Positions 18,539 through 62,530 of a DNA stretch of 64,000 bases are shown here, piece after piece. The position numbers and the translations under genes were made by a program. The DNA is from Hypanus sabinus (Eukaryota), in the NCBI RefSeq assembly GCF_030144855.1, contig NC_082710.1:28458001-28522000 (forward strand), given 5' to 3'. The notes under the pieces were generated by a model. It was not told where the DNA came from. It ran no database searches and saw only the letters and a list, made by a program, of their open reading frames with translations. Numbering within the stretch: the first letter of the stretch is position 1; every line of letters begins with the position of its first letter.

Positions 18539-20383
18539 CTGTATATTGTTTACACTGTGAGCTTCACATGAGCGATGATTTTCCCCTGTTTATATGACAG
18601 TAACCATCTGAACTTGATGGTTATAAGCTCATTTTTAGAATGCTAGGCAGCCAGATGACAAAAAGTTATATTCTACCTATTTTGTGTATTGTATAGCTGC
18701 GGCAATTTTCAGACAGAAGTAATCACACTGACAATACCTGGCAGAAATTCATTAATAATAATGCACAATGCCAATAACCTCCCATATCTGTTCAATTTCT
18801 ATGTAAAGATGTGAAATTATGAAATGTATAGAGCTGAAATAGAGGCATGATTTTGAAATAAAGTTCCAACCTTTTAAGAAGAAAAATTAAAAATTAACAG
18901 GTTGAATTATGCTCCTCTGCCTCATTGCCACTCAAAGTTCCACTCTTCTAGATCCGTCATAAGGAGAAAGAATACCAGTAACTTCTGCTGATAGGAGCCT
19001 GTGAAAATCTTATTTCTTTCATTTTCCTTGCTGCAGTTTTAACCACTCTGACTTTTTTGAAAGCATGATACCCAGCAACTTCTAGGCAAACAGGCGATCA
19101 CTGCGATTGTAATTAAAGAGAGATGAATCACAGATGCCTTGCATGCAGCTTAACAGGGATGTTTCATTAAGTTAGAAAAATAAAGTTCAGCTTTCCAAAT
19201 TATATAATACAACTTTTGTGAATTATTTTAATCAGATATAGATATAAATTTGTAGCTAGATTGGCATTAAAAATAAGCAAGGATATATATTTAATGAATG
19301 TGCCTCACTTAAGAATAATAAAAAGGAGATTTTTCCAACTATAATGTGATAAGAAACTGATTGCCAACGTTAGGATACACTTTTAGTTTTTTATGCTCGG
19401 GGTGAAAAATTGATTAAGTATTGCACAGAAGAAATTCAGACAAAGCTCCTTTGAGTTTACCATCCAGTCAAATTTGTGAGTGAAAGAATTCATAATCTTA
19501 TTGATGGGACATTGCATATTGAAGCAGCTGTATGCTTTTGACTGCACACCTCAACAAGATTTTATTTTTTAAGTTTTGTATTAAGAGACTTGGATACCTA
19601 GAATTGCAGCCCACAAAAAAGAAATTGTGAGTGAAAAGTGAACTGGTTGCCTTGTAGCACAGTCCCCTACGTGTTCAGTTTTCTCCTAGATGATGATGTT
19701 CATTTATAAAAAGATGAACCAAATGAAAGCAAAGTTATTTCAAATATACTTTGTCCTATAGTTACATAATTAGTGACTGTTATGTTGACATGGTCTTCTT
19801 TTACACAACTATTGACTCAGTACCCTAAAATCAAATTATATAAGCATCTGGAAGAATATATTTAGTTGTTTCTGATATTGGAACAAATGGTGAATACTTT
19901 CTTTTTTTTATTCTTAATTGCTTACTGAATAATTATTGGAGCAAATCAGGCTAAGTTATTCCCTGGAGTTGAAAGGCTGCTGCATGATGTGATAACATGA
20001 CCATGTGTGAATCAAAACAAGTAATGATTCCAAATAGCTGTTCAAGTTTATTCATCTCAGTTTTCTGGAGGCTGTAAAGTAACAAATCAAATTATACCTG
20101 ACACAATCTGTAGACACTTACCAACAAATTCCAGATTACTGGCTGCAATCCACTTGGATCTGTAACACTGGCATTCTGGGAACACACCTGCTTGGTGTAT
20201 GATTCAAAGCAAGACAGGCAATGCAGGAAATACACAACAGGGCCATTAACTTCTGAATCAGTGTTGTGTTAATGACTGGTTAATGTTAACAAAATGAGGA
20301 AAAAATTGGAAAATATCAGGAAAAATTAATTAATAAAATGTAGGCTATAAGTAAATGAAGAAATACAGGTGAAGTCAGAAGTT

Positions 20384-21947
20384 CAAGTCAAGTCAATTCA
20401 AGTCACTTTTATTGTCATATCGAACATAACTGCTGGTACAGTACATAGTCAAAATGAGACAACGTTTTTCAGGACCATGGTGTAACATGACACAGTATAA
20501 AAACTAGACTGAACTACATAAAAAAGCAACACAGAGAAAGCTACACTAGACTACAGACCTACACTGGACTGCATAAAGTGCACAAAAACAGTGCAGGAAT
20601 TACAACAAGTAATAAACAGGACAGTAGGGCAAGGTGTCAGTCCAGGGTCTGGGTATTGAGGAGTCTGATAGCTTGGGGGAAGTAACTGTTACATAGTCTG
20701 GTCGTGAGAGCCTGAATGCTTCGGAGCCTTTTCTCAGATGACAGGAGGGAGAAGAGATTGTATGACGGGTGCATAGGGTCCTTCATAATACTGTTTCCTT
20801 TGCGGATGCAGCATGTGGTGTAAATGTCCGTGATGGCAGGAAGAGAGACCCCAATGATCTTCTCAGCTGATCTCACTATCCGCTGCAGGGTCTTGTGATC
20901 TGAGATGGTGCAATTTCCGAACCAGGCAGTGATGCAGCTGCTCAGGATGCTCTCAATACAACCCCTGTAGAATGTGATGAGGATGGGGGGGTGGGGAGAT
21001 GGAATTTCCTCAGCCTTCGCAGAAAGTAGAGACGCTGCTGGGCTTTCTTTGCTATGGAGCTGATGTTGAGGGACCAGGTGAGATTCTCTGCCAGGTGAAC
21101 ACCAAGAAATTTGGTGCTGTTAACGATCTCTACTGAGGAGCTGTCGATGTTCAGCGAGGAGTGGTCGCTCCATGCCCTCCTGAAGTCAACAACCATCTCT
21201 TTTGTTTTGTTCACATTCAAAGACAGGTTGTTGGCTCTGCACCAGTCTGTTAGCCACTGCACCTCCTCTCTGTAAGCTGACTCATCGTTCTTGCTGATGA
21301 GACCCACCATGGTTGTGTTATTGGTGAACTTGATGATGTGGTTTGAGCTGTGTGTTGCAGCACAGTCGTGGGTCAGCAGAGTGAACAGCAGTGGACTGAG
21401 CACACAGCCCTGGGGAGCCCCCCGTGCTCAGTGTGATGGTGTTGGAGATGCTGCTCCCGATCTGGACTGACTGAGGTCTCCCAGTCAGGAAATCTAGGAT
21501 CCAGTTGCAGAGGGAGGTGTTCAGGCCCAGTAGGCTCAGCTTTCCAATCAGTTTCTGAGGGATGATTGTGTTGAATGCTGAACTGAAGTCTATGAACAGC
21601 ATCCGAACGTATGTGTCTTTTTTTGTCCAGGTGGGTTAGGGCCAGGTGGCAATGGGGTCATCTGTTGAGCGGTTGGGAAGGTACGCAAACTGCAAGGGGT
21701 CCAGTGAGGGGGGCAGCAGGGTCTTGATATGCTTCTTGACGAGCCTCTCGAAACACTTCATGATGATGGATGTAAGTGCAACGGGATGGTAGTCATTTAG
21801 GCAGGACAGTGAAGACTCCTTCAGCACAGGGATGATGGTGACGGCCTTGAAGCATGTTGGAACGGTGGTGCTGCTCAGGGAGATGTTGAAGATGTCAGTG
21901 AGAACATCTGCTAACTGGTCTGCACATCCTCTGAGCACTCTACCAGG
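20384..21947 (-). mobile_element. Young 5'-truncated Rex1/Babar-like LINE inserted in the left outer DR
   Basis: ORFs 21636-21938, 21318-21602, 20942-21403 and 20637-20876 carry RT motifs ([34 protein letters not shown]). (TTGAC)n tail. TSD GAAGTT at 20378-20383 and 21948-21953. Confidence 0.95.
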
Positions 21948-22163
21948 GAAGTTTACCTACACCTTAGCAAAATACATTTAAACTCAGTTTTTCACAATTC
22001 CTGACATTTAATCCTAGAATACATACCCTGTCTTAGGTCAGTTAGGATCACTACTTTATTTTAAGAATGTGAAATGTCAGAATAATAGTAGAGAGAATGA
22101 TTTATTTCAGCTTTTATTTCTTTCATCAATTTCCCAGTGGGTCAGAAGTTTACATACACTTTG

Positions 22164-22881
22164 TTAGTATTTGGTAGCATTGCCTTTAAATTGTTTAGCT
22201 CGGGTCAAACGTTTTGGCTAGCCTTCCACAAGCTTCTCACAATAAGTTGCTGGAATCTTGTTCCATTCCTCCAGACAGAACTGGTGTAACCGAGTCAGGT
22301 TTGTAGGTCTCCTTGCTCGCACACGCGTTTTCAGTTCTGCCCACAAATTTTCTACCAATTTTGTGAAGTACACCACAATGTGATGCTGCCACCCCCATGC
22401 TTCACGGTTGGGATGGTGTTCTTCGGCTTGCAACCCTCACCCTTTTTCCTCCAAACATAACGATGGTCATTATGGCCAGACAGTTCAATTTTTGTTTCAT
22501 CAGACCAGAGGACATTTCTCCAAAAAATGCACTTGCAAACTGTAGTCTGGCTTTTTAATGGCGGTTTTGAAGCAGTGGCTTCTTCCTTGCTGAGCAGCCT
22601 TTCAGGTTATGTCAATGTAGGACTCGTTTTACTGTGGATATAGATACTTGTCTACCTGTTTCCTCCAGCGTCTTCACAAGGGCCTTTGCTGTTGTTCTGG
22701 GATTAATTGCACTTTTTGCGCCAAGGTACAATCATCTCTAGGAGACAGAAGACGTCTCCTTTCTGAGCAGTATGACGGCTGCGTGGTCCCATGGTGTTTA
22801 TACTTGCGTACTATTGTTTGTACGGATGAATGCGGTACCTTCAGGCTTTTGGAAATTGATCCCAAGGATGAACCAGACTTG
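22164..22881 (-). pseudogene. Sleeping Beauty-type transposase pseudogene (start lost, catalytic region deleted)
   Basis: KSGSSLGSISKSLKVPHSSVQTIVRKYKHHGTTQPSY, LEETGRQVSISTVKRV and FWRNVLWSDETKIEL..KHGGGSI, then a jump to VENLWAELK..GNATKY*. Confidence 0.93.
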
Positions 22882-22890
22882 ATATCATTT

Positions 22891-23097
22891 TCTGACCTCA
22901 ATCCGATAGAAAATTTGCTGGCAGAACTGAAAGAGTGTGTGCGAGCACGGAGGCCTACAAACCTGACTCAGTTACACCAGTTCTGTCTGGAGGAATGGAA
23001 CAAAATTCCAGCAGCTTACTGTGAGAAGCTTGTGGAAGGCTACCCAAAGCGTTTGACCCAAGTTAAACAATTTATAGGCAAAGCTACCAAATACTAA
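22891..23097 (+). pseudogene. Inverted duplicate of the transposase C-terminus
   Basis: SDLNPIENLLAELKECVRARRPTNLTQLHQFCLEEWNKIPAAYCEKLVEGYPKRLTQVKQFIGKATKY*, the tail of ORF 22648-23097. Confidence 0.93.
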
Positions 23098-23200
23098 CAA
23101 AGTGTATATAAACTTCTGACCCACTGGGAAAGTCATGAAAGAAATAAAAGCTGAAATAAAGCATTCTCTCTACTATTACTCAGACATTTCACATTCTTAA

Positions 23201-23898
23201 TGCAGCCGCCGGTAAGCCTCCAGTTCGCTCAGCTCACTTCCGTCTAGGGGGAGCAGCCTTCGGCCCCGCCAAGCTGGGTAATCAACTTGTGTAGATGCTG
23301 TGTGATGTCCCCAACACGCCAAATAACAGACAGTATGCCATATGCGATTAAATGATTACACTTTATAGATCTTACTGGAACTATTCTTTTAATAGAGGTA
23401 CAATATAAAAGAAAAAATAAAAGGCGCCAAACTTATCAAAGTCCAACCACTTTGTGCACAACTGTTGGAGCTCAGTTAACAAAGTCTACTTGCCACCATT
23501 CGATCCCCTCCGACCTCCTCGACCCGCAGCCTGGGACCAACAACTGTGGTCGACCAAACGCTCCACACGAATCTGTCCTCGTCTCCTCTCCTCACCGAAG
23601 ACCCTGGGCCTCGGACTCCAGCTTACAGCATCACATTTCCTCTTTTCCACCCCATTGCGCCTTCTCCCCAAAGCCCGTGAAACAATAGCTTACAGACCTA
23701 CAAGAAAGAATAACATCAATCCCAATAGGTTAACAAATAAATACCATTCTCGTTATCAATAATTATAACCCAAACAAGCTGTGAGAGAAAAGCACTTTCT
23801 CAGCAGTTACCATAAGAAAGAAACATTTTTATTTTTAACATAACAAAGAAGCCATTTTATTAGCCATAGCAGTAACATAAAAGAAGAAACCCCTTACA
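23201..23898 (-). mobile_element. Solo LTR (698 bp; Gypsy or ERV) inserted in the right IR
   Basis: TG...CA termini (TGCAG...TTACA); TTAA duplicated at 23197-23200 and 23899-23902; removing it restores the IR colinear with the left copy; CpG-rich. Orientation is tentative. Confidence 0.85.
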
Positions 23899-25469
23899 TT
23901 AAAATAAAATAGTGATCCTAACTGACCTAAGACAGGGAATGTTTTCTAGGATTAAATGTCAGGAATTGTGAAAAACTGAGTTTAAATGTATTTGGCTAAG
24001 GTGTTTGTAAACTTCTGACTTCAACTGTAGGTCTCCTGAAAACGTAAAAAAGATTTGAAATAGGAAGACTCAGTTTTGAGCCTGAGAGGCAGTAATTGCT
24101 TGATCTAACTAATGTCTACTATCTTTGTACTTCAGTTTGGTTGCATTGAATAGTAGAGTTAGAACCACATTTGACAGTGGTCTGTTACGCACTATGGACC
24201 ATAATGCCATTTTTTTCTAGTACTGAGTTTGGTCTCATTACTCACCTCACACTTGTCTTTAGCTTTCAAGAATATTATTCATTTTTGGATAGTGAAAGCA
24301 TGAAGCTCAGTGGCTTGACTCAGTCAGCTAAGATCAGAGGTACATCTGCTAAAATCCATCCCAGTTTGTGAATGTAGCTTCCAGAGTTTATAAAATGCGA
24401 GCATTTGAGGAAAGGAAGTTTCCAAGTCGGCCTGTAAGTAATTAATTACCTGGCTTTAGTATCCATCTTAATGTTGCAGTAATAAATTGATTGACTGGTT
24501 ATTCTGAAAACAAGCATTGCTGGAAATATTCACCAAATCAGGCAGCGTTAATGGTGAAACACCAAATAGTTAGCATTTTAGTTCTAAGATCTATTCTCAG
24601 CACAGCTGAGCTAGTAATATTACCTGCAGGAAGAATGTTGATAAAGGACTCTCTTCCCCAAAAAATAACATTGGACTATTACTATCCTTTTAATTATAGA
24701 AATAGGGCTATATTTCATATGTCTACAATGTAAGTCTCCTGGAGATGTATGAGCCTTCAAACATTGTAATGATTTGATTCTACGATCTTTTGAATCAGAT
24801 AACCCAATGGTATTATTAAAACCAAAATGACATTTGGGAGCATTGTTAATCTCAAAACTAAAATAGATTTGTGTAGTGTGGAATGCTAACATGAAGTAAG
24901 TGTAAAAACGATATTTAACAATTTTGGACAGCTTTGTCAGTTTTAATGGCTGTTGGACTGCAAACAGATGACATGTCCCTGCTCTGTTTCAGATTAAATG
25001 CTGAATGTTAAGTTTCTGGTTTACTGAAAGGAGTTGAAAACTACTATAAGGAATTTTTATTTTTCCACTTCTAGCCAACAGGAGCATGAGAATCTTTGGC
25101 CTGACATAAAAACTAATGTTTCACATTCCAAACTACACTTTTTTTTCACTCAAGTACATCACAAACAATCCTCAAATACCTAAATCATATTTATCTGTCC
25201 TCTGACAATTGACAATTAATCTCCCGACAGCCATGCAGATTCCTTTTCTGGACTGCTGTTTCTATGGGTATTCCCCTCTGTCCTCAGTCTGGCTTCCAGT
25301 GAAGATGGGTTGGAGGGGTTGCTGTTGCTAAGGAAAACACAGATTGTGGAATTACAACTCCATGACTTTTAGACCCCGAAATATCTCTAACCATCGGATT
25401 GAAAATCCAATCAAAGTAGATCAAAGTTCTTTGAAAGATTTCTTTATAGAAACATGGAAATATTGATAA

Positions 25470-45692: not shown

Positions 45693-46140
45693 ATGTCAAG
45701 TGTTCAGTCAATAGTTCAATTTAATATCAGAGAAATGTATACAAAATACAACCTGAAATTCTTACTCTTCGCAGACATCCACAAAACAGGGAGAAAAAAA
45801 TCTCAAAGAATGAAGGACAGAAAAATTTTAAGAACCCCAAAGCTCGTCTCCCCCCCCTCCCATGCACAAGCAGCAGCAAACACATCACCTTCCCTGCCTC
45901 CACTTACTTCAGTAAAAAGCATCAGCCCCCCATTATCCACCAACCCCACCCCCAGAGAACACGATCTAAAGTCCATCAAAAAACTACCATCCATCCAAAC
46001 ACTTCAACATCTCAACAGACTCTCTGTCTCAGTAACAAGGGAGAAGGAGATATTGTGCTTTCTACAGTGAGAAGGGAGTCCAAAAGCTCACTGCTTCAAT
46101 GTTACAGTCTACAGCATCGCTTACTCAAGATCCTGCGACT
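45693..46140 (-). mobile_element. Diverged relative of the 12903-13722 retroposon
   Basis: Shares TCAGAGAAATGTATA..CCTGAAAT..AGAACCCCAA..AAAAAGCATCAGC..CTCTCTGTCTCAGTAACAAGGGAG. Confidence 0.75.
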
Positions 46141-54113: not shown

Positions 54114-55066
54114 ATGGGGGAGACAGTTAGAGCAGTGGTGTGCTCAGTATACAGTATGTGGGAGGTCAGGGTCAACACAGTTGTCCCTGATGACCACACC
54201 TGCAATAGGTGCATCCAGCTGCAGCTCCTATCAGACCGAGTTAGGGAATTGGAGCAGGAGCTGGATGAACTACGGATCATTCGGGAGGCAGAGGCAGAGA
54301 TAGATAAGAGTTATTGGGAGGTAGTCACACCGAAAAGACAGGAGGTAGGCAAATGGGTGACAGTCAAGAGAGGCAGGGGGAGCAGACAGTGAGAGAAGAG
54401 CACCCCTGTGGCCATTCCCATCAAAAATAAATATACCGTTTTGGATACTGTTGGTGGGGATGACCTACCAGGAACAAGCTGCAGTGGTCCTGTCTCTGGC
54501 ACTGAGGTACTGAGGTTGGACCCTCGACTAGGAAGGGGAGGAGGGAAGAGAAGAGAGCGGTAGTGATAGGGGATTCTATAGTCGGGGGGGGGGCGGATAG
54601 GAGATTTTGTGGGGAAGATTGGGAGTCTCGGATGGTATGTTGCTTCCCTGGTGCCGGGGTCCAAGACATCTCAGATCGGGTGCAGGTTATTCTCGAGAGG
54701 GAGGGCAAGAATCCAGATGTTGTGGTCCATGTAAGGACCAATGACGTAGGTAGGATGAGAGAGGGGGTCCTGCGTAGTGAGTTCAGGGAGTTAGGTGCGA
54801 AGCTGAAGAGCAGGACCCCCAGGGTAACAATCTCTGGATTGCTACCTGTGCCACGTGCGAGTGAGGCAAGGAACAGAAAGATTATACAGATTAATATGTG
54901 GCTGAGAGGATGGTGCAGGAGGGAGGGCTTCAGGTTTGTAGATAATTGGGCTTTGTTCCAGGGAAGGTGGGATCTGTTCCGAAGGGACGGTTTACACCTG
55001 AACTGGAGCGGTACTAACATTCTTACAGGAAAGTTTGCTAGTGCTTCTTGGGGGGTGGGGGTTTAA
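54114..55066 (+). pseudogene. CR1 ORF1: zinc finger, coiled coil, SGNH/GDSL esterase
   Basis: CSVY..CNRC, LQLLSDRVRELEQELDEL, then IGDSIV, GAGVQD, VHVRTND and DGLHLN; stop at 54392 and a frameshift. Confidence 0.9.
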
Positions 55067-55370
55067 ACTAAATTTGCAGGGGGTGGGGATCCAGAATGTG
55101 AGAGAGGATAGCGAGAGGAAGAATAAAGGACAGGTGGGGACTACAAGGTTCCGGAATATTAAGAGTGTAGTAGAGAAAGGTGAGGCGGAACAAGTGATAA
55201 GGAGGACACGTGTACAGAGGGATGGTCTGATGGAACATGGAGTTAAATGTGTTGAAAGAATAAGTAAATTTAGGAAGGACAACAAAATTCTAGGGGCGTA
55301 TAGCCTGATGGGAGTTCAGGGAGCTGGGTTAAGCACAGTAGGCAGTGATTCAAACAGAGAGAGGAGAAAT

Positions 55371-58171
55371 GGGCTAATAATTCTATATCTGAATGCACAA
55401 AGTGTCAGAAATAAGGCGGATGAGCTTGATGCTCAGGTGCGAATGGGTAACTATGATGTTGTTGGGATAACGGAGACATGGCTGCAGGGAGATCAGACCT
55501 GGGAAATGAATGTTCAAGGGTATACGTGCTATCGTAGGGACAGAAATGTGGGCAGAGGTGGTGGGGTGGCCCCGTTGGTGAGGAATGAGATTCAGTCCTT
55601 TGCAAGGGAGGATATAGGGTCAGGAAAAGTAGAGTCTGTGTGGATAGAATTGAGGAACAGTAAGGGCAAAAGGACCCAAATGGGTATTGTCTACAGGCCA
55701 CCAAACAGTAGCATGGATATTGGGTGCAAGTTGAATAGGGAGTTAACATTGGCATGAGGCAAAGGTAATGTCACAGTAGTTATGGGGGATTTCAACATGC
55801 AGGTGAACTGGGAGAATCAGGTTGGTGCTGGACCTCAGGATAGGGAGTTTATAGAGTGCCTATGGGATGCATTCTTGGAACAGCTTGTACGAGAGCCAAC
55901 CAGGGACACGGCTATTCTGGATTTAGTGTTACGTAATGAACAGGATTTGATAAGCGATCTTGCAGTAAGGGAGCCATTAGGAGGTAGTGATCATAATATG
56001 ATAAGCTTTTATCTGCAATTTGAGAAGGGTAAGGGCAGCTCGGAGGTGTCAGTGTTGCAGTTGAACAGGGAAACTATGGAGCCATGAGGGAGGAGCTGGC
56101 CAAAGTTGACTGGATGGATAGCCTCGCAGAAAAGACAGTTGAACAGCAATGGCAGGTATTCTTGGGAATACTGCACAAGGTGCAAAATCAGTTCATCCCC
56201 CAGATTCAAGTGGAGGAAAGGGGCCACAGTGGTTGACAAAGGAAGTCAGAGATTGCACAGCATTAAAAAAAAGGAAGTATGACAGAGCTAAGGTGAGTGG
56301 GAGGACAGATGATTGGGAAGTTTTTAAGGAACAACAGAACTTAACTAAAAAGACAATACAGGGAGAAAAAATGAGGTACGAACACAGGCTAGCCGGGAAT
56401 ATAAAGGAAGATAGCAAAAGCTTTTTTAGGTATGTGAAGAAAAAGAAGATAGTTAAGAACAATGTTGGGCCCTTGAAGGATGAATTGGGTGAAATTGTTA
56501 TGGGAAACAGAGAAATGGCGGAAGAATTTAATGAGTACTTTAGATCTGTTTTCACGAAGGAAGACACAAGCAATTTTTCAGATGTACGGATGGGCCAAGG
56601 ACATAGAGTATCAGAGGAAGTGAAACAGATTGACATTAGGAAGGAAACGGTGATGAGAAGACTTATGGGACTGAAGGCTGACAAATCCCCAGGTCCAGAT
56701 GGTCTGCATCCTAGGGTACTAAAGGAGGTGGCCCTGGAAATTGTGGATGCATTGGTAATCATTTTCCAATGTTCCTTAGATTCAGGATCAGTTCCTGAGG
56801 ATTGGAGAATGGCTAATGTTATCCCACTTTTTAAGAAAGGAGGGAGGGAGAAAACAGAGAACTATCGACCTGTCAGACTGACATCGGTGGTGGGGAAGAT
56901 GCTAGAGTCCATTATTAAGGATGAAATAGTGGCATATCTAGATAGCAGTGATAGGATTGGGCCGAGCCAGCATGGATTTACCAAGGGTAAATCATGCTTG
57001 ACTAATCTGTTGGAGTTTTTCGAGGATGTAACCAGGAAGTTAGACGGGGGAGATCCAGTGGATGTAGTGTACCTCGATTTTCAGAAGGCATTTGATAAGG
57101 TCCCACATAAGAGATTGGTGGGTAAAATCAAAGCTCAGGGCATCGGGGGGAAGACATTGACATGGATAGAAAACTGGTTGGCAGATAGAAAGCAAAGGGT
57201 AGCGGTGAATGGGTGTTTCTCGGAATGGCAGGTGGTGACTAGTGGGGTGCCACAGGGCTCAGTATTGGGACCACAGCTGTTTACAATTTACTTCAACGAC
57301 TTGGATGAAGGCATTGAAAATAACATCAGCAAATTTGCTGATGATACTAAGCTGGGTGGCAGTGTGACGTGATGAGGATGTTAGGAGAATTCAGGGTGAC
57401 TTGGATAGGCTGGGTGAGTGGGCAGATACTTGGCAGATGACGTTTAATGTGAATAAGTGTGAGGTTATCCACTTTGGGAGTAAGAACAGGAAGGCAGATT
57501 ATTATCTGAACAGTGTAGAGTTAGGTAAGGGAGAAATACAAAGAGATCTAGGAGTCCTTATTCATCAGTCACTGAAGGTGAATGAGCAAGTGCAGCAGGC
57601 AGTGAAGAAGGCTAATGGAATGTTGGCCTTTATTACAAAGGGAATTGAGTACAAGAGCAAGGAAATCCTCTTGCATTTGTACAGAGCCCTGGTGAGACCA
57701 CACCTGGAGTATTGTGTACAGTTTTGGTCTCCAGGGTTAAGGAAGGACATCCTAGCTGTAGAGGAAGTGCAGCATAGATTCACGAGGTTAATTCCTGGGA
57801 TGTCTGGACTGTCTTACGCAGAGAGGTTAGAGAGACTGGGCTTGTACACGTTGGAATTATAGAGATTGAGAGGGGATCTGATTGCAACATATAAGATTAT
57901 TAAGGGATTGGACAAAATAGAGGCAGGAAATATGTTCCAGATGCTGGGAGCGTCCAGTACCAGAGGGCATGGTTTGAGAATAAGGGGAAGGTCATTTAGG
58001 ACAGTGTTAAGGAAAAACTTCTTCTCCCAGAGAGTTGTGGGGGTCTGGAATGCACTGCCTCGGAAAGTAGTGGAGGCCAATTCTCTGGATGCTTTCAAGA
58101 AGGAGCTAGATAGGTATTTCATGGATAGGGGAATCAAGGGATATGGTGACAAGTCAGGAACTGGGTATTGA
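55371..58171 (+). pseudogene. CR1 ORF2: AP endonuclease plus reverse transcriptase
   Basis: YLNAQS, GITETWL, YRPP, GDFN and SDH (endonuclease); [26 protein letters not shown] and FADDTK (RT); broken by a few stops and frameshifts. Confidence 0.96.
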
Positions 58172-58269
58172 TGGTAGTTGATCAGCTATGATCTCAAAAT
58201 GGCGATGCAGGCTCGAAGGGCCAAATGGTCTACTTCTGCACCTATTGTCTATTGTCTACCAGATATTGA

Positions 58270-59088
58270 AATTCGTATATAGAATGGACATGGAGAGGAT
58301 GTCTCCAATAGTGTGAGAGTCTATGACAAGAGGACACAGCCTCAGAATAGAAAGACATCACTTTAGAAAAGAGAAAAGGGACAGTTTTTCAGCCAGTGGG
58401 TGGTGTTTCTGAGAAATTCATTGCCGTAGATGGCTGTGGAGAACATCAATGGATATACTGAAAGCAGCGGTTGATAGTTTCTTAATTATTAAGGTGTCAA
58501 AGGTTATGGGGAGAAGAATTATGGATCATTTACAGAGGAGGTGAGCGCCATGGGAGCATAGCGGTCAGTGTGATGCTGTTACGGATTGGTGCATCGGAAT
58601 TCAGCGTTCAGTCTTGGCATCATCTTTAAGGAGTCTCTGTACATAAGCATGAAGTAATATGTGTTCCATCCTACCGGAAGTTGAAGGGCTAGATAGAATA
58701 GACGTGGAGAGGATGTTTCCAATAGTGGGAGAGTCTATGACAAGAGGGTACAGAATACCGTCTCTGTGGAATGTGTGGATTTTCTCTGGGGCCTCCAGTT
58801 TCCTGCCTCCCACAGTCCAAAAACATACCAGATAGGCTAATAGGTCATTGTAAATTGTCCCAAGATTAGTTTAGGGTTAAATCCGGGATGTTGGGGGTGG
58901 CTGGGCAGTGTGGCTTTAAGGGCTAGAAAGGTCTATTCTGCGCTGTATCTCTAAACAAATAGATAAGATAGATAAATAATTAAGAATGGGGTGAGAGTGA
59001 AACTAAATCAGCCATGATCAAACGGGGGAGCAGCCATGATGGGCCAAAAGGTCTACTTCTGCTTCTATGTCATATGATCTTATGGTAT
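58270..59088 (+). mobile_element. Older CR1 3' fragment interrupted by a SINE
   Basis: CR1 C-terminus 58270-58518 (..VKGYGEK) resumes at ~58982 with the 3' UTR and a TATGATCTTATGG tail. Confidence 0.8.
58550..58980 (+). mobile_element. V-SINE-like SINE containing a short CR1 piece
   Basis: tRNA-like head, core TTTCTCTGGGGCCTCCAGTTTCC..CACAGTCCAA..GGTCATTGTAAATTGTCC, tail CTGTATCTCTAAACAAATAGATAA. Confidence 0.7.
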
Positions 59089-59384
59089 AAAGGAGAAAAA
59101 GTCTGTTTGAATGCACCTTAAAGGAACAAGTCTGAACAGTTGTTCAAGAGGGAGCCTTTGAAGTGAAAAATAAGCTCAAACAGACCTCTTGGGAATTTTC
59201 TATTTTGGAATTTGCTTACTTGGAGTTGTGGTGGATAATAAATTATAAGAAAGTATATGTGGCCATTCCTATACTTGCCACAAGCTTTAATTGCATGTAA
59301 GAAACTGTAAAACTATAGATTTATAAAATTCTAAACTTTATACAGTTAGCTCGCTATAGTTATGGTTAACAATAAAACAGCAAT

Positions 59385-62300
59385 CTCAGGACTACTACCT
59401 GTACCACACAACAGTGAGTATAGGAATAGAGTGAGATGGACGATAAAGGCATGACTGAGGGATTGGAGCAGGGGACAGGAATTCAGATTTCTGGATTATT
59501 GGGATCTCTTTTGTGGCAGGCATAACAGATGCATGTGAATCCAAGGGGAACCAATATCCTGGCAGGGAGACTTGCTAAGGCTATTGGAGAGAGTTTAAGC
59601 GAATTGCTAGGGGGTGGGAACCAAACTGAAGAGATGGAGGAAGGGACGGTTAGCTCACAAATAGAGAAAGCTTGGAGACAGTGTGAGAGGGAGGATAGGC
59701 AGGTGAAAGAGACAGGATGCGCTCAGACTGATGGTTTGAGATGTGTCTATTTTAATGCAAGGGTATCATGAACAAAGTGGATGAGCTAAGAGTGTAGATC
59801 GGTTCTTGGAGCTATGATATTGTGGCCATTACAGAGACTTGGATGGCTCAGGGGCAGGAATGGTTACTTAAGAGTGCCAGGCTTTAGATGTTTCAGAATG
59901 GATAAGGAGGAAGGCAAAAGAAAAGAAGTGGGGGCTTGGCATTGCTGATCAGAGATAGCATCACGGCTGCAGAAAAGGAGGAAGTCATGGAGGGATTGTC
60001 TACTGAGTCTCTGAGGGTGGAAGTTAGGAACAGGAAAGAGTCAAAAACTCTACTGGGTGTTGGGGTGGCAGATTTTAATTTCCCCAATATTGATTGGCAT
60101 CTTCCTAGAGCAAGGGGTTTAGATAGGGTGGAGTTTGTCAGGTGTGTTCAGGAAGGTTTCCTAACACAAAATGTAGATAAGCCTACAAGAAGAGAGGCTG
60201 TACTTTATGTGATATTGGGAAATGAACCTAATCAGGTGTCAGGTCTCTCAGTGGGAGAGCACTTTGGAGATAGTGATCACAATTCTATCTCCTTTACCAT
60301 AGCATTAGACAGGGATAGGAACAGACAATTTAGGAAAGTGTTTAATTGGAGTAAGGGGAAATATGAAGCAATCAGGTAGGAACTTGGAAGCATAAATTGG
60401 GAACAGATGTTCTCAGGGAAATGTACTGCAGAAATGTGGCAAATGTTCAGGGGATATTTGTGAGATGTTCTACAGAGGTACATTGCAATGAGACAGGGAA
60501 AGGATGGTAGGGTACAGGAACTGTGGTGTACAAAGGCTGTTGAAAATCTATTCAAGAAGAAAAGAAAAGCTTACGAAAGATTCAAAAAACTAGGTAATGA
60601 TAGAGATCTAGAAAATTATAAGGCTAGCAGCAAGGAGCTTAAGAATGAAATTAGGAGAGCTAGAAGGGGCCTTGAGAAGACTTTAGCGATCAGAATTAAG
60701 GAAAACCCCAAGGCATTCCACAAGTATGTGAAGAGGAAGAGGATAAGACATGAGAGAAAAGGACCAATCAAGTGTGACAGTGCAAAAGTGTGTGTGGAAC
60801 TAGAGAAGATAACAGATATACTTAATGAATGCTTTGCTTCTGTATTCACTTTGGAAAAGGATCTTTGCAATTGTAGGGATGACTTACAGCAGACTGAAAA
60901 GCCTGAGCATATAGACATTAAGAATGAAGATGTGCTGGAGCTTTTGGAAAGCATCAGATTGGATAAGTCACCAGGACTGGATGAGATACACCCCAGGCTA
61001 CTGTGGGAGGTGAGGGAGGAGATGGCTGATCGTCTGGCGATGATCTTTGCATCATCAATGGGGATGGGAGAGGTTCCGGAAGATTGGAGGGTTGCAGATG
61101 TTGTTTCCTCGTTCATGAAAGGGAGTGGAGATAGCCCAAGAAATTATAGACCAGTGAGTCTTACTTCAGTGGTGGGTAAGTTGATGGAGAAGATCCTGAA
61201 AGGCAGGATTTATGAACATTTGGAGAGTCATAATATGGTTAGGGATAGTCAGCATGGTTTTGTTTAATGCATGTCGTGCCTTACAAGCCCGATTGAATTT
61301 TTTGAGGATGTGACTAAAAACATTGATGATGGTAGAGGAGTAGATGTAGTGTATATGAATTTCAGCAAGGCATTTGATAAGGTACCCCATGCAAGGCTTA
61401 TTGAGAAAGTAAGGAGGCATGGGATCCAAGGGGGCCTTGCTTTGTGGATCCAAAATTTGCTTGCCCACAGAAGACAAAGAGTGGTTGTAGATGGGTTATA
61501 TTGTGCATGGAGGTCAGTGACCAGTGGTGTGCCTCAGAGATCTGTACTGGGACCCCTTCTCTTGGTGATTTTTATAAACGACCTGAATGAAGATGTGAAG
61601 GGATGGGTTAGTAAATTTGCTGATGACACAAATGTTGGGGGTGTTCTAAATAGTGTGGAGGGCTATCAGAGGTTACAGTGGGACATAGATAAGATACAAA
61701 ACTGGGCTGAGAGATGGCAGATGAAGTTCAACCCAGATAAGTGTGAGGTGGTTCATTTTCGTATGTCAACTATGATGGCAGAATATAGTATTAATGGTAA
61801 GACTCTTGGCAGTGTGGAGGATCAGAAGGATCTTGATGTCTGAGTCCATAGGACACTCAAAGCTGCTGCACAGGTTAACTGTGTGGTTAAAAAGGCATTT
61901 AGTGCTTTGGCCTTCATCAACCACGAGATTGAGTTTAAGAGCCGAGAGGTAATGTTACAACTTTATAAGACCCTGGTCAGACCCCACTTGGAGTGCTGTG
62001 CTCAGTTCTGGTCACCTCACTACAGGAAGAATGTGGAAACTATAGAAAGGGTGCAAAGGGATTTTACAAGGATGTTGCCTGGATTGGGGAGCATGCCCTA
62101 AGAGAATAGGTTGAGTGAACTTGGCCTCTTCTCCTTAGAGTGATGGAGGATGGGAGGTGATCTGATAGAGGTGTATAAGATAATGAGATGCATTGATCAT
62201 GTGGACAGTCAGAGGCTTTTCCCAGGGCTGAAATGGCTAATATGAGAGGGCACAGTTTTAAAGTGCTTGGAAGTAGATACAGAGGAGATGTCAGGGGCAT

Positions 62301-62530
62301 GTTTTTTATGCAGAGGGTGGTGAGTGCATGGAATGGGTTGCTGGCGACGATGGTGGAGGTGGATATGATAGGGTCTTTTAAGAGACTCTTGGATAAATAT
62401 ATGGAGCTTAGAAAAATAGAGAGCCATGGGTAATCCAAGGTAATTTCTAAAGTAAGTACATGTTTGGCACAGCATCGTGGGCCAAAGGGCCTGTATTGTG
62501 CTGTAGGATTTCTATGTTCTGTGCTCTATG
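59385..62530 (+). mobile_element. CR1 LINE (end of esterase ORF1 plus ORF2), decayed
   Basis: ISGLLPVP and MHVNPRGTNILAG (ORF1 end); CVYFNAR and SDH (endonuclease); RT ORFs 60488-61267 and 61271-61843 (FADDT); (TTCTATG)n tail. Confidence 0.96.

What the first reader, a model, noticed from the sequence alone, without database searches (positions are those of the whole stretch)
20366..24027. Sleeping Beauty-like transposon in an apparent cartilaginous fish: horizontal transfer candidate
Seen: transposase segments (SSVQTIVRKYKHHGTTQPSY; VRARRPTNLTQLHQ; LVEGYPKRLTQVKQF) and the whole non-coding IR/DR closely follow the Sleeping Beauty/salmonid Tc1 subfamily as I recall it. Inference: such similarity in non-coding IR sequence is hard to reconcile with vertical descent since the cartilaginous/bony fish split, and suggests horizontal transfer. 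It may also supply natural variants of SB transposase and binding sites.
Basis: partly seen in the sequence, partly recalled or inferred. Interest (0 to 1): 0.7.

Follow-up and report, generated by a model that had tools for sequence, protein, structure and literature searches.

The report
Dead Sleeping Beauty-type transposon in stingray
A stingray genome carries a long-dead, rearranged copy of the jumping-gene family that Sleeping Beauty was rebuilt from; it is far too similar to trout copies to be inherited from a shared ancestor, so the family crossed between bony fishes and rays, a known kind of event in a new host group.

Summary
Window 20366-24027 is one Tc1 element of the Sleeping Beauty (SB) clade, flanked by TA duplications, and all three quoted peptides are present. 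It is not an ordinary copy. Both ends are the RIGHT inverted repeat. The left repeat, the 5' leader and about the first 18 codons are replaced by an inverted copy of the last ~206 bases of the gene plus the right repeat. The remaining gene (minus strand) has frameshifts, stops and a ~228-base deletion. A LINE fragment (20386-21947) and a 698-base insert (23201-23898) are nested in the two ends.

The host is a stingray-lineage fish: a LINE in the same window is 90% identical to a Hypanus sabinus protein, and no teleost was named among the 120 hits listed. Contigs from related species carry the same flank-to-element junctions, so this is not contamination.

The non-coding right repeat is 88-91% identical to rainbow trout copies, similar to trout copies compared with each other (90%). 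That supports horizontal transfer. I did not compute a host-gene control.

The same right/right junction occurs in a Mobula hypostoma protein model, so this form spread as a non-autonomous derivative. The scan has already reported this family and the right/right form elsewhere in this genome. This copy offers no usable transposase.

The parts
20364..20365 (.). Left TA target-site duplication
   Evidence: Read directly: TA followed by CAGGTGAAGTC.
20366..20385 (+). Outermost 20 bases of the left-hand terminal repeat (outer direct-repeat start), cut off from the rest by a LINE insertion
   Evidence: Inverted-repeat pair I3 with 24010-24034. Matches the outer end of L001 at 94%.
20386..21947 (-). 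Nested 5'-truncated non-LTR retrotransposon (LINE) fragment with reverse-transcriptase remnants. Flanked by a GAAGTT duplication (20380-20385 and 21948-21953).
   Evidence: Pfam RVT_1 and PF09004 hits on minus-strand ORFs. The duplicated GAAGTT appears when the fragment is removed. Contig depth is far above the flanks in all four related runs.
21948..22164 (-). Remainder of the left-hand terminal repeat. It is a RIGHT-type IR/DR in inverted orientation, with the inner direct repeat at about 22137-22162.
   Evidence: 91-95.5% identical to right repeats of L001, L003 and L005, and 89% to trout L006/L007. Only the ~60-base inner repeat matches the trout left repeat, at 81%.
22165..22881 (-). Decayed transposase gene on the minus strand, running from the stop codon back to about codon 18. 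It has at least 3 frameshifts, in-frame stops and a ~228-base internal deletion at 22354/22381 that removes the D244 region. The WSDETK (D153) and ENLW (E279) motifs are still readable.
   Evidence: Three-frame translation. BLAST mapping on trout L002: 22381-22881 aligns to 2441-1935 and 22171-22354 aligns to 2853-2670. Matches to 2m8e and Pfam HTH_SB.
22882..22891 (.). Head-to-head junction between the minus-strand gene (about codon 18) and the plus-strand gene tail (about codon 272)
   Evidence: Limits of the two BLAST alignments. An ORF reads straight across it, and the same junction is in Mobula hypostoma protein P0242.
22892..23097 (+). Last ~206 bases of the transposase gene on the plus strand (SB residues ~273-340, stop TAA at 23095-23097)
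   Evidence: Match to 5cr4, E 1e-30. 85-88% identical in DNA to trout copies.
23098..23200 (+). Inner part of the right terminal repeat (inner direct repeat at about 23099-23128)
   Evidence: 92-93% identical to L001 and L003, 86-87% to trout. Arm of inverted repeat I1.
23201..23898 (.). Nested 698-base insertion of an unclassified repeat, flanked by TTAA (23197-23200 and 23899-23902)
   Evidence: Absent from L001, L003, L005 and trout at this point. No Rfam or tRNA match. Its first ~335 bases have very high contig depth in related species.
23899..24027 (+). Outer part of the right terminal repeat, with the outer direct repeat and terminus
   Evidence: 97% identical to L001 and 91% to trout L006/L007. 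Inverted repeats I2 and I3.
24028..24029 (.). Right TA target-site duplication
   Evidence: Read directly: CAACTG followed by TA.

Best explanation
This is a fixed, long-dead, non-autonomous derivative of a Tc1/mariner DD34E transposon of the Sleeping Beauty clade, sitting in a stingray-lineage genome.

Structure: the unit that inserted here, by cut-and-paste into a TA, was already a 'right/right' form. Each of its ~435-base termini is the right IR/DR plus the last ~190-206 bases of the transposase gene. Between them lies an inverted fragment of the gene covering about codons 18-205. Each end keeps an outer and an inner transposase-binding repeat, so a transposase made by full-length copies elsewhere could move it. 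It lacks the left repeat, which carries the enhancer in SB.

Later history: after insertion it decayed neutrally and was hit by a LINE fragment and by a 698-base repeat.

Origin: the family entered the ray lineage by horizontal transfer from, or through a vector shared with, bony fishes. It then amplified to high copy number before the sampled stingray relatives diverged.

Shown: the structure, the SB-clade relationship, the host lineage, the shared junctions and the small ray-to-trout distance. Inferred: the horizontal transfer itself (no host-gene control was computed), its direction, mobilisation in trans and the way the right/right form arose (aberrant repair or template switching).
For: Structure
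- TA duplications and termini are read directly.
- Inverted-repeat arms 22061-22354 / 22907-23200 (92%) and 21948-22064 / 23899-24015 (95%) run past the repeat into the coding sequence.
- The left-hand repeat is 91-95.5% identical to right repeats of relatives. Only its inner ~60 bases match a trout left repeat.
- In the near-complete relative L003, the left and right repeats are only about 68% alike.

SB clade
- Matches to 2m8e, 5cr4 and Pfam HTH_SB.
- Coding DNA is 84-89% identical to trout. This is within the >80% reported inside the SB clade and well above the 61% between SB and SB-like (PMC9777934).

Host and endogeneity
- The window's LINE ORF is 90% identical to a Hypanus sabinus protein.
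- Contigs of relatives 2-3% diverged in the flanks run from flank into the element at both ends (X15 records 11 and 16, X16 records 18 and 22).
- A ~9%-diverged relative reaches 18 bases into the left end, and has a single-copy-depth contig across the internal junction.

Transfer
- Window arms against trout copies are 85-88.5% identical in the gene tail and 87.6-88.5% in the right repeat. Trout against trout is 90%.
- The ray group (two window arms plus L001) has 100/99 support. It sits on a branch of only 0.023 from the trout-type group, with end branches of 0.04-0.06.

Spread of the right/right form
- Mobula hypostoma protein P0242 aligns without a gap across the same junction.
- None of its TTC33 part is found in this window.

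Literature
- The SB clade was reported in 107 ray-finned fishes and one mollusc, and in no cartilaginous fish.
- Tc1/mariner makes up 2.3-3.3% of ray and skate genomes against 0.14% in sharks and 0.03% in chimaera.
Against: - No host-gene distance (for example RPL3/RPL4 dS) was computed here. The excess similarity is judged against general knowledge of the cartilaginous/bony fish split.
- The closest outside relative (L001, assembly GCA_013565615.1) and loci L003-L005 come from organisms I could not name. The donor lineage and the direction of transfer are therefore open.
- Absence from sharks and chimaeras is taken from the literature and from named protein hits. It is not from a genome census.
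- Contig junction evidence extends only 18-22 bases into the repeat, short of the tool's own 31-base bridging rule.
- That the Mobula copy lies at a different locus is likely but not proven, because its introns could be longer than the window.
Confidence: 0.85

Rival explanations
1. There are two independent, truncated SB-type insertions lying head to head (or one inserted into the other), not one right/right unit that transposed as such.
For: The two halves are on opposite strands and differ by 5-8%. The minus-strand half keeps much more of the gene than the plus-strand half.
Against: The whole unit is bounded by one pair of TA duplications with intact outer termini. A Mobula hypostoma protein model reads across the very same junction, gap-free over 101 residues, and no TTC33 exon is in this window. 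A 287-base contig of a ~9%-diverged relative spans the junction. Earlier scan notes report other right/right copies in this genome; these are leads only.
Confidence: 0.07
2. Vertical inheritance: the family has been in both lineages since the common ancestor of jawed vertebrates and stayed similar through constraint or very slow evolution in rays.
For: Cartilaginous fishes evolve slowly (general knowledge). The transposase-binding repeats are functionally constrained while an element is active.
Against: The compared copies are dead on both sides. Non-coding repeat spacers are as similar as coding DNA, about 88% in both. The ray-to-trout distance barely exceeds the trout-to-trout distance. A resident LINE in the same window is only 57-66% identical in protein to the other named shark, chimaera and Hypanus hits. 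The SB clade was not found in cartilaginous fishes in a 2022 survey, and Tc1/mariner is scarce in sharks and chimaeras.
Confidence: 0.02
3. Contamination or misassembly: teleost DNA was joined into a ray scaffold.
For: High similarity to trout sequences. Teleost DNA is a common laboratory and dietary contaminant.
Against: Flank-to-element junctions at both ends recur in Logan contigs of three related organisms. The element is interrupted by a LINE fragment that is hugely abundant in those same genomes. The Tc1 part has roughly a thousand times the flank depth in all four runs. The ray copies carry their own diagnostic substitutions.
Confidence: 0.01

Closest known systems
Sleeping Beauty / salmonid-type Tc1 elements (SB clade of DD34E Tc1; Ivics 1997 reconstruction; survey in PMC9777934)
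   Same: TA duplication and an IR/DR architecture of about 230 bases with outer and inner direct repeats. PAI-type HTH 91% identical and C-terminus about 81% identical to SB. Coding DNA 84-89% and right repeat 88-91% identical to rainbow trout copies. The stop codon abuts the inner repeat of the right end.
   Different: The host is a stingray, not a ray-finned fish. The ray copies form their own subgroup. This copy has no left repeat (the one that carries the HDR enhancer in SB, PMC5224488) and no 5' leader or start codon. It lacks the D244 region and carries two nested insertions.
[quoted passage not shown] 2012, PMC3516227)
   Same: A Tc1 family shared at high DNA identity between teleosts and a vertebrate lineage that split from them more than 400 million years ago, with high copy number in the recipient.
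   Different: A different Tc1 family (DTSsa1 'Group 1'). PCR for that family was negative in cartilaginous fishes, including thornback ray. Here the partner is a batoid, and no parasite or vector link is known.
Internally rearranged, non-autonomous DNA-transposon derivatives with two identical ends (for example MITE-like derivatives, and engineered SB constructs with swapped repeats)
   Same: Two identical termini with binding sites, no working gene, moved in trans, and the same breakpoint in copies from two ray families.
   Different: The termini are long (~435 bases) and include gene sequence. Mobilisation has not been demonstrated experimentally. The copy number of this form was not measured here.

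Membership tests
Tc1/mariner, IR/DR subgroup | TA target-site duplication at both ends | tested here: met
   TA at 20364-20365 and 24028-24029, next to CAGGTGAAGTC... and ...GACTTCAACTG.
Tc1/mariner, IR/DR subgroup | Long (~230-base) terminal inverted repeats, each with an outer and an inner direct repeat | tested here: met
   Direct repeats D1 and D3 and inverted repeats I1-I4. The core motif is found 3 times against 0 expected. Full-length alignment to intact right repeats.
Sleeping Beauty clade (DD34E Tc1) | [quoted passage not shown] | tested here: met
   Pfam PF25787 HTH_SB, 52 bits against a cut-off of 43. 31 of 34 residues identical to 2m8e.
Sleeping Beauty clade (DD34E Tc1) | Coding DNA more than 80% identical to clade members (the within-clade value in PMC9777934) | tested here: met
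   84-89% to three O. mykiss copies over 184-531 bases. The criterion was read.
Sleeping Beauty clade (DD34E Tc1) | Complete DD34E catalytic triad in one reading frame | tested here: not met
   The D153 and E279 motifs are readable, but a ~228-base deletion removes the D244 region, and there are frameshifts and stops. This is a property of this dead copy, not of the family.
Sleeping Beauty clade (DD34E Tc1) | Distinct left repeat (with the HDR enhancer) and right repeat | tested here: not met
   Both ends are right-type. Only the ~60-base inner repeat matches a trout left repeat. The HDR role comes from PMC5224488.
Horizontally transferred transposon | Element distance far below host-gene neutral distance | tested here: inconclusive
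   The element distance was measured (about 12% ray to trout; master branch 0.023). The host-gene dS was not computed because there was no usable host coding gene pair.
Horizontally transferred transposon | Patchy taxonomic distribution | tested here: inconclusive
   Named hits among cartilaginous fishes: only Mobula hypostoma. Literature: no SB in Chondrichthyes in 2022, and Tc1/mariner is rich in skates and rays but poor in sharks and chimaera. No genome census was possible.
Horizontally transferred transposon | Endogenous in the recipient (not contamination) | tested here: met
   Junction contigs in related species, a nested host LINE, and high copy depth in four runs.

The most novel reading that the evidence does not exclude
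The Sleeping Beauty clade proper crossed the bony/cartilaginous fish boundary into the stingray and devil-ray lineage (Myliobatiformes). I found no paper reporting this. There it amplified partly as a right/right derivative lacking the left repeat and its enhancer. That would mean natural SB-type transposases can efficiently mobilise enhancer-less, two-right-end substrates in vivo.
Probability: 0.5. Interest if true: 0.45.

Novelty: new member of a known kind. Interest (0 to 1): 0.35.

Why it matters
Horizontal transfer of Tc1 elements among fishes, and into lampreys, is well documented. A further case adds a host lineage and not a new principle. Three things would be of modest value.
- It extends the known range of the SB clade to cartilaginous fishes. 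A 2022 survey found it there in none.
- It offers a likely cause for part of the published, unexplained Tc1/mariner expansion in rays and skates compared with sharks.
- It gives a natural population of right/right derivatives that could show how far the SB ordered-assembly rules tolerate loss of the left repeat and enhancer.

This particular copy has no practical use as a source of transposase variants.

Tried and rejected
- **Left-repeat comparison.** I first compared the window's left-hand repeat with a trout LEFT repeat and found only about 55-60% similarity outside the direct repeats. I briefly took this to mean the element was not salmonid-like. It was the wrong comparison, because both window ends are right-type. 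Against trout right repeats the identity is 88-91%.
- **Naming the unnamed loci.** Paper searches for the assembly and run accessions behind L001, L003, L004 and L005 found nothing useful.
- **The 698-base insert.** It has no Rfam or tRNA match and no other copy in the window, so it stays unclassified.
- **A host-gene control.** I looked for a host coding gene in the window. I found only LINE ORFs and one weak TORC_M-like ORF, below Pfam's cut-off.
- **The Mobula locus.** A look-up of the genomic locus for Mobula P0242 found no record.
- **Sequencing-run names.** Organism names are coded, so they could not name the host.
- **SB vector repeats.** I did not compare with the engineered pT/SB vector repeats, because no tool supplied that sequence and memory is unreliable.
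- **Searches and builds not run.** The exhaustive protein search was not used, as the family was already clear.
Full report
**1. What is at 20366-24027**

The stretch begins TA|CAGGTGAAGTC and ends GACTTCAACTG|TA. These are the termini and TA duplication of a Tc1 element.

Only about 1.4 kb of the 3.66 kb is Tc1 sequence:
- 20366-20385
- 21948-23200
- 23899-24027

The other two blocks are unrelated insertions:
- **20386-21947** is a 5'-truncated LINE fragment on the minus strand. It has RVT_1 and PF09004 remnants and is bounded by a duplicated GAAGTT.
- **23201-23898** is a 698-base unclassified repeat bounded by TTAA on both sides. Intact relatives lack it at exactly this point. It has no Rfam or tRNA match.

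**2.

All three quoted peptides are present, but they lie on opposite strands.
- The N-terminal piece (minus strand) matches the solved PAI subdomain of the SB transposase, with 31 of 34 residues identical. It passes Pfam's curated cut-off for HTH_SB.
- The C-terminal piece (plus strand, 22892-23097) matches SB100X residues 163-230 of chain 5cr4 at about 81% identity, E 1e-30.
- The direct-repeat core occurs three times where none is expected by chance.

**3. Anatomy: a right/right element**

The inverted-repeat search finds two pairs of arms:
- 22061-22354 with 22907-23200 (294 bases, 92% complementary)
- 21948-22064 with 23899-24015 (117 bases, 95% complementary)

These arms run beyond the terminal repeat into the coding sequence.

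Mapping on a rainbow trout copy (L002) gives three alignments:

| Window | Strand | L002 |
|---|---|---|
| 22171-22354 | minus | 2853-2670 |
| 22381-22881 | minus | 2441-1935 |
| 22892-23097 | plus | 2655-2860 |

So the minus-strand gene runs from its stop codon back to about codon 18, with a ~228-base internal deletion. At about 22882-22891 the sequence switches to the plus-strand last ~206 bases of the gene, followed by a right repeat.

In ordinary SB-type elements the left and right repeats differ. In the near-complete relative L003 they are only about 68% alike. The trout left repeat matches the window repeat well only over the ~60-base inner direct repeat. By contrast, the window's left-hand repeat is 91-95.5% identical to the right repeats of L001, L003 and L005, and about 89% to those of trout L006 and L007. 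Both ends are therefore right ends. The left repeat, the 5' leader and the first ~18 codons are missing.

The minus-strand gene has at least three frameshifts and several in-frame stops. It lacks the region of the second catalytic aspartate. The WSDETK (D153) and ENLW (E279) motifs are still readable. The copy is dead and could never have been autonomous in this form.

**4. The right/right form is a propagated variant**

A RefSeq model from the devil ray Mobula hypostoma (P0242, annotated as TTC33 isoform X3) ends in about 98 residues that align without a gap to the window ORF that reads across the junction. The aligned part covers both the antisense reading of the PAI region and the sense C-terminus.

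None of the TTC33 part of P0242 is found in the 64-kb window, so this is most likely a different locus.

A single-copy-depth contig of a ~9%-diverged relative also spans the junction (X1 record 3).

Earlier notes of this scan describe other right/right copies in the same genome, one of them with about 95 relatives (s1-187813, s1-146739). I treated these as leads. The Mobula result is my own partial test of them.

**5. Host and endogeneity**

The window holds no clear host coding gene. It has only LINE ORFs and one weak TORC_M-like ORF.

As a proxy I searched a 407-residue LINE ORF from the same window:
- The best named hit is from the Atlantic stingray Hypanus sabinus, at 90% identity.
- The next named hits are sharks, a chimaera and a second H. 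sabinus protein, at 57-66%.
- No teleost is named among the 120 hits listed.

Laying Logan contigs of four runs on 19200-25100 gave the following:
- The flanks are 2-3% diverged in three organisms (X15, X16, X20) and about 9% in a fourth (X1).
- In X15 and X16, contigs run from the unique flank through the left terminus into the nested LINE (to 20405). Others run from 24006 in the right terminus out into the right flank.
- In X1, a flank contig reaches 18 bases into the left terminus.
- The Tc1 part draws roughly a thousand times the depth of the flanks in all four runs.

These junction overlaps are shorter than the tool's 31-base bridging rule, because contigs break in repeats. They are still consistent across species.

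The element is therefore endogenous, high-copy and fixed. At this locus it is older than the split from the 2-3%-diverged relatives, with the LINE already in place, and probably older than the split from the 9%-diverged one. The arms' end branches (0.041 each) agree with about 4-4.5% per lineage in the flanks.

**6. Similarity to bony-fish copies**

Word-based protein searches with the C-terminal piece return hundreds of fragments. The named ones are from Oncorhynchus, Salmo, Coregonus, Sander, Prochilodus and Denticeps. I fetched DNA for three O. mykiss copies and four unnamed loci.

Over the gene tail plus right repeat:

| Comparison | Gene tail | Right repeat | Overall |
|---|---|---|---|
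| Window arms vs trout copies | 85-88.5% | 87.6-88.5% | – |
| Trout copy vs trout copy | – | – | 90% |
| Window arm vs window arm | – | – | 92% |

An IQ-TREE analysis groups the two arms with L001 (support 100/99). Only a 0.023 branch separates that group from an unresolved trout-type cluster, and most divergence sits on end branches of 0.04-0.06.

Non-coding and coding parts are equally similar, as expected for neutral decay from nearly identical active ancestors. For lineages that separated well over 400 million years ago (general knowledge), this fits horizontal transfer and not descent.

**7. Placement**

Coding identity to trout (84-89%) lies within the >80% reported inside the SB clade and far above the 61% between SB and SB-like (PMC9777934).

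The ray copies and L001 share their own substitutions (FCLEEW.KIPA.YCEK against LCQEEWAKIHPTYCGK in salmonids; TAACAAAG against TAATTGAG after the stop). Some of these states recur in Sander and Prochilodus fragments. The family is SB clade, but a salmonid donor is not shown. The organism behind L001, the closest outside relative, could not be identified.

**8. Mechanism**

In SB, transposase first binds the inner repeats, pairs the two ends and then cuts at the outer repeats. The left repeat carries an extra enhancer (PMC5224488).

The element here keeps an outer and an inner repeat at each end, close to those of intact relatives. It lacks the enhancer-bearing left repeat. By inference, it was mobilised in trans by transposase from full-length copies and has been immobile since. 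How the right/right form arose is also inference. Interrupted gap repair with a strand switch is the usual explanation for such derivatives.

**9. What is known**

- The 2022 survey found SB in 107 ray-finned fishes and one mollusc. It found none in Chondrichthyes, though ZB-like occurred in one species.
- A 2025 genome paper reports Tc1/mariner at 2.3-3.3% of ray and skate genomes against 0.14% in sharks and 0.03% in chimaera. It describes expansion rounds and does not mention horizontal transfer.
- The teleost-lamprey case concerns another Tc1 family, which was PCR-negative in cartilaginous fishes.
- Further searches found no report of SB-type elements in batoids.

**10. Verdict**

The finding is real, and its main inference holds. 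It is a new host lineage for a well-known kind of event. This scan has already followed up the same family elsewhere in this genome (s1-233771, s1-216717, s1-187813). This copy is a decayed right/right derivative with two nested insertions, and it is of no use as a source of transposase variants. Interest is moderate to low.

Noticed in passing
P0242 (Mobula hypostoma), residues ~138-235; compare window 22792-23094: A RefSeq model of TTC33 isoform X3 in the devil ray ends in an ORF that reads across the right/right junction of this transposon family (antisense PAI region joined to sense C-terminus). It is either an exonised transposon or an annotation artefact.
   Followed up: partly
window 23201-23898: A 698-base insertion in the right repeat, flanked by TTAA on both sides. 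It has no terminal inverted repeats that I could see and no Rfam or tRNA match. Its first ~335 bases have very high contig depth in related species, so it may be a SINE-like repeat.
   Followed up: partly
window 20386-20970: The 3' part of the nested LINE fragment, ending in a CAAGT-like short repeat tail, has by far the highest contig depth of the stretch in all four related runs (about 10^5 times the flanks). It is likely the tail shared by a very abundant LINE/SINE family.
   Followed up: no
window 54300-62400: A cluster of LINE ORFs (endonuclease and reverse transcriptase) with strong G over C skew. The 407-residue ORF at 56149-57372 is 90% identical to a Hypanus sabinus protein annotated as 'STARD3 N-terminal-like isoform X1', which looks like a transposon-derived exon in that annotation.
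   Followed up: partly
window 45693-46070 (+): A 125-residue ORF with a weak, below-cut-off match to the TORC_M domain of CREB-regulated transcription coactivators (24 bits against 27). It may be a host exon, which would place the element in or near a CRTC-like gene.
   Followed up: no
L001 (GCA_013565615.1, contig JACCDO010263149.1): The closest relative of the ray subfamily (repeat 94-97% identical, same diagnostic substitutions) comes from an assembly whose organism I could not determine. It may be another batoid, or it may point to the donor lineage.
   Followed up: partly
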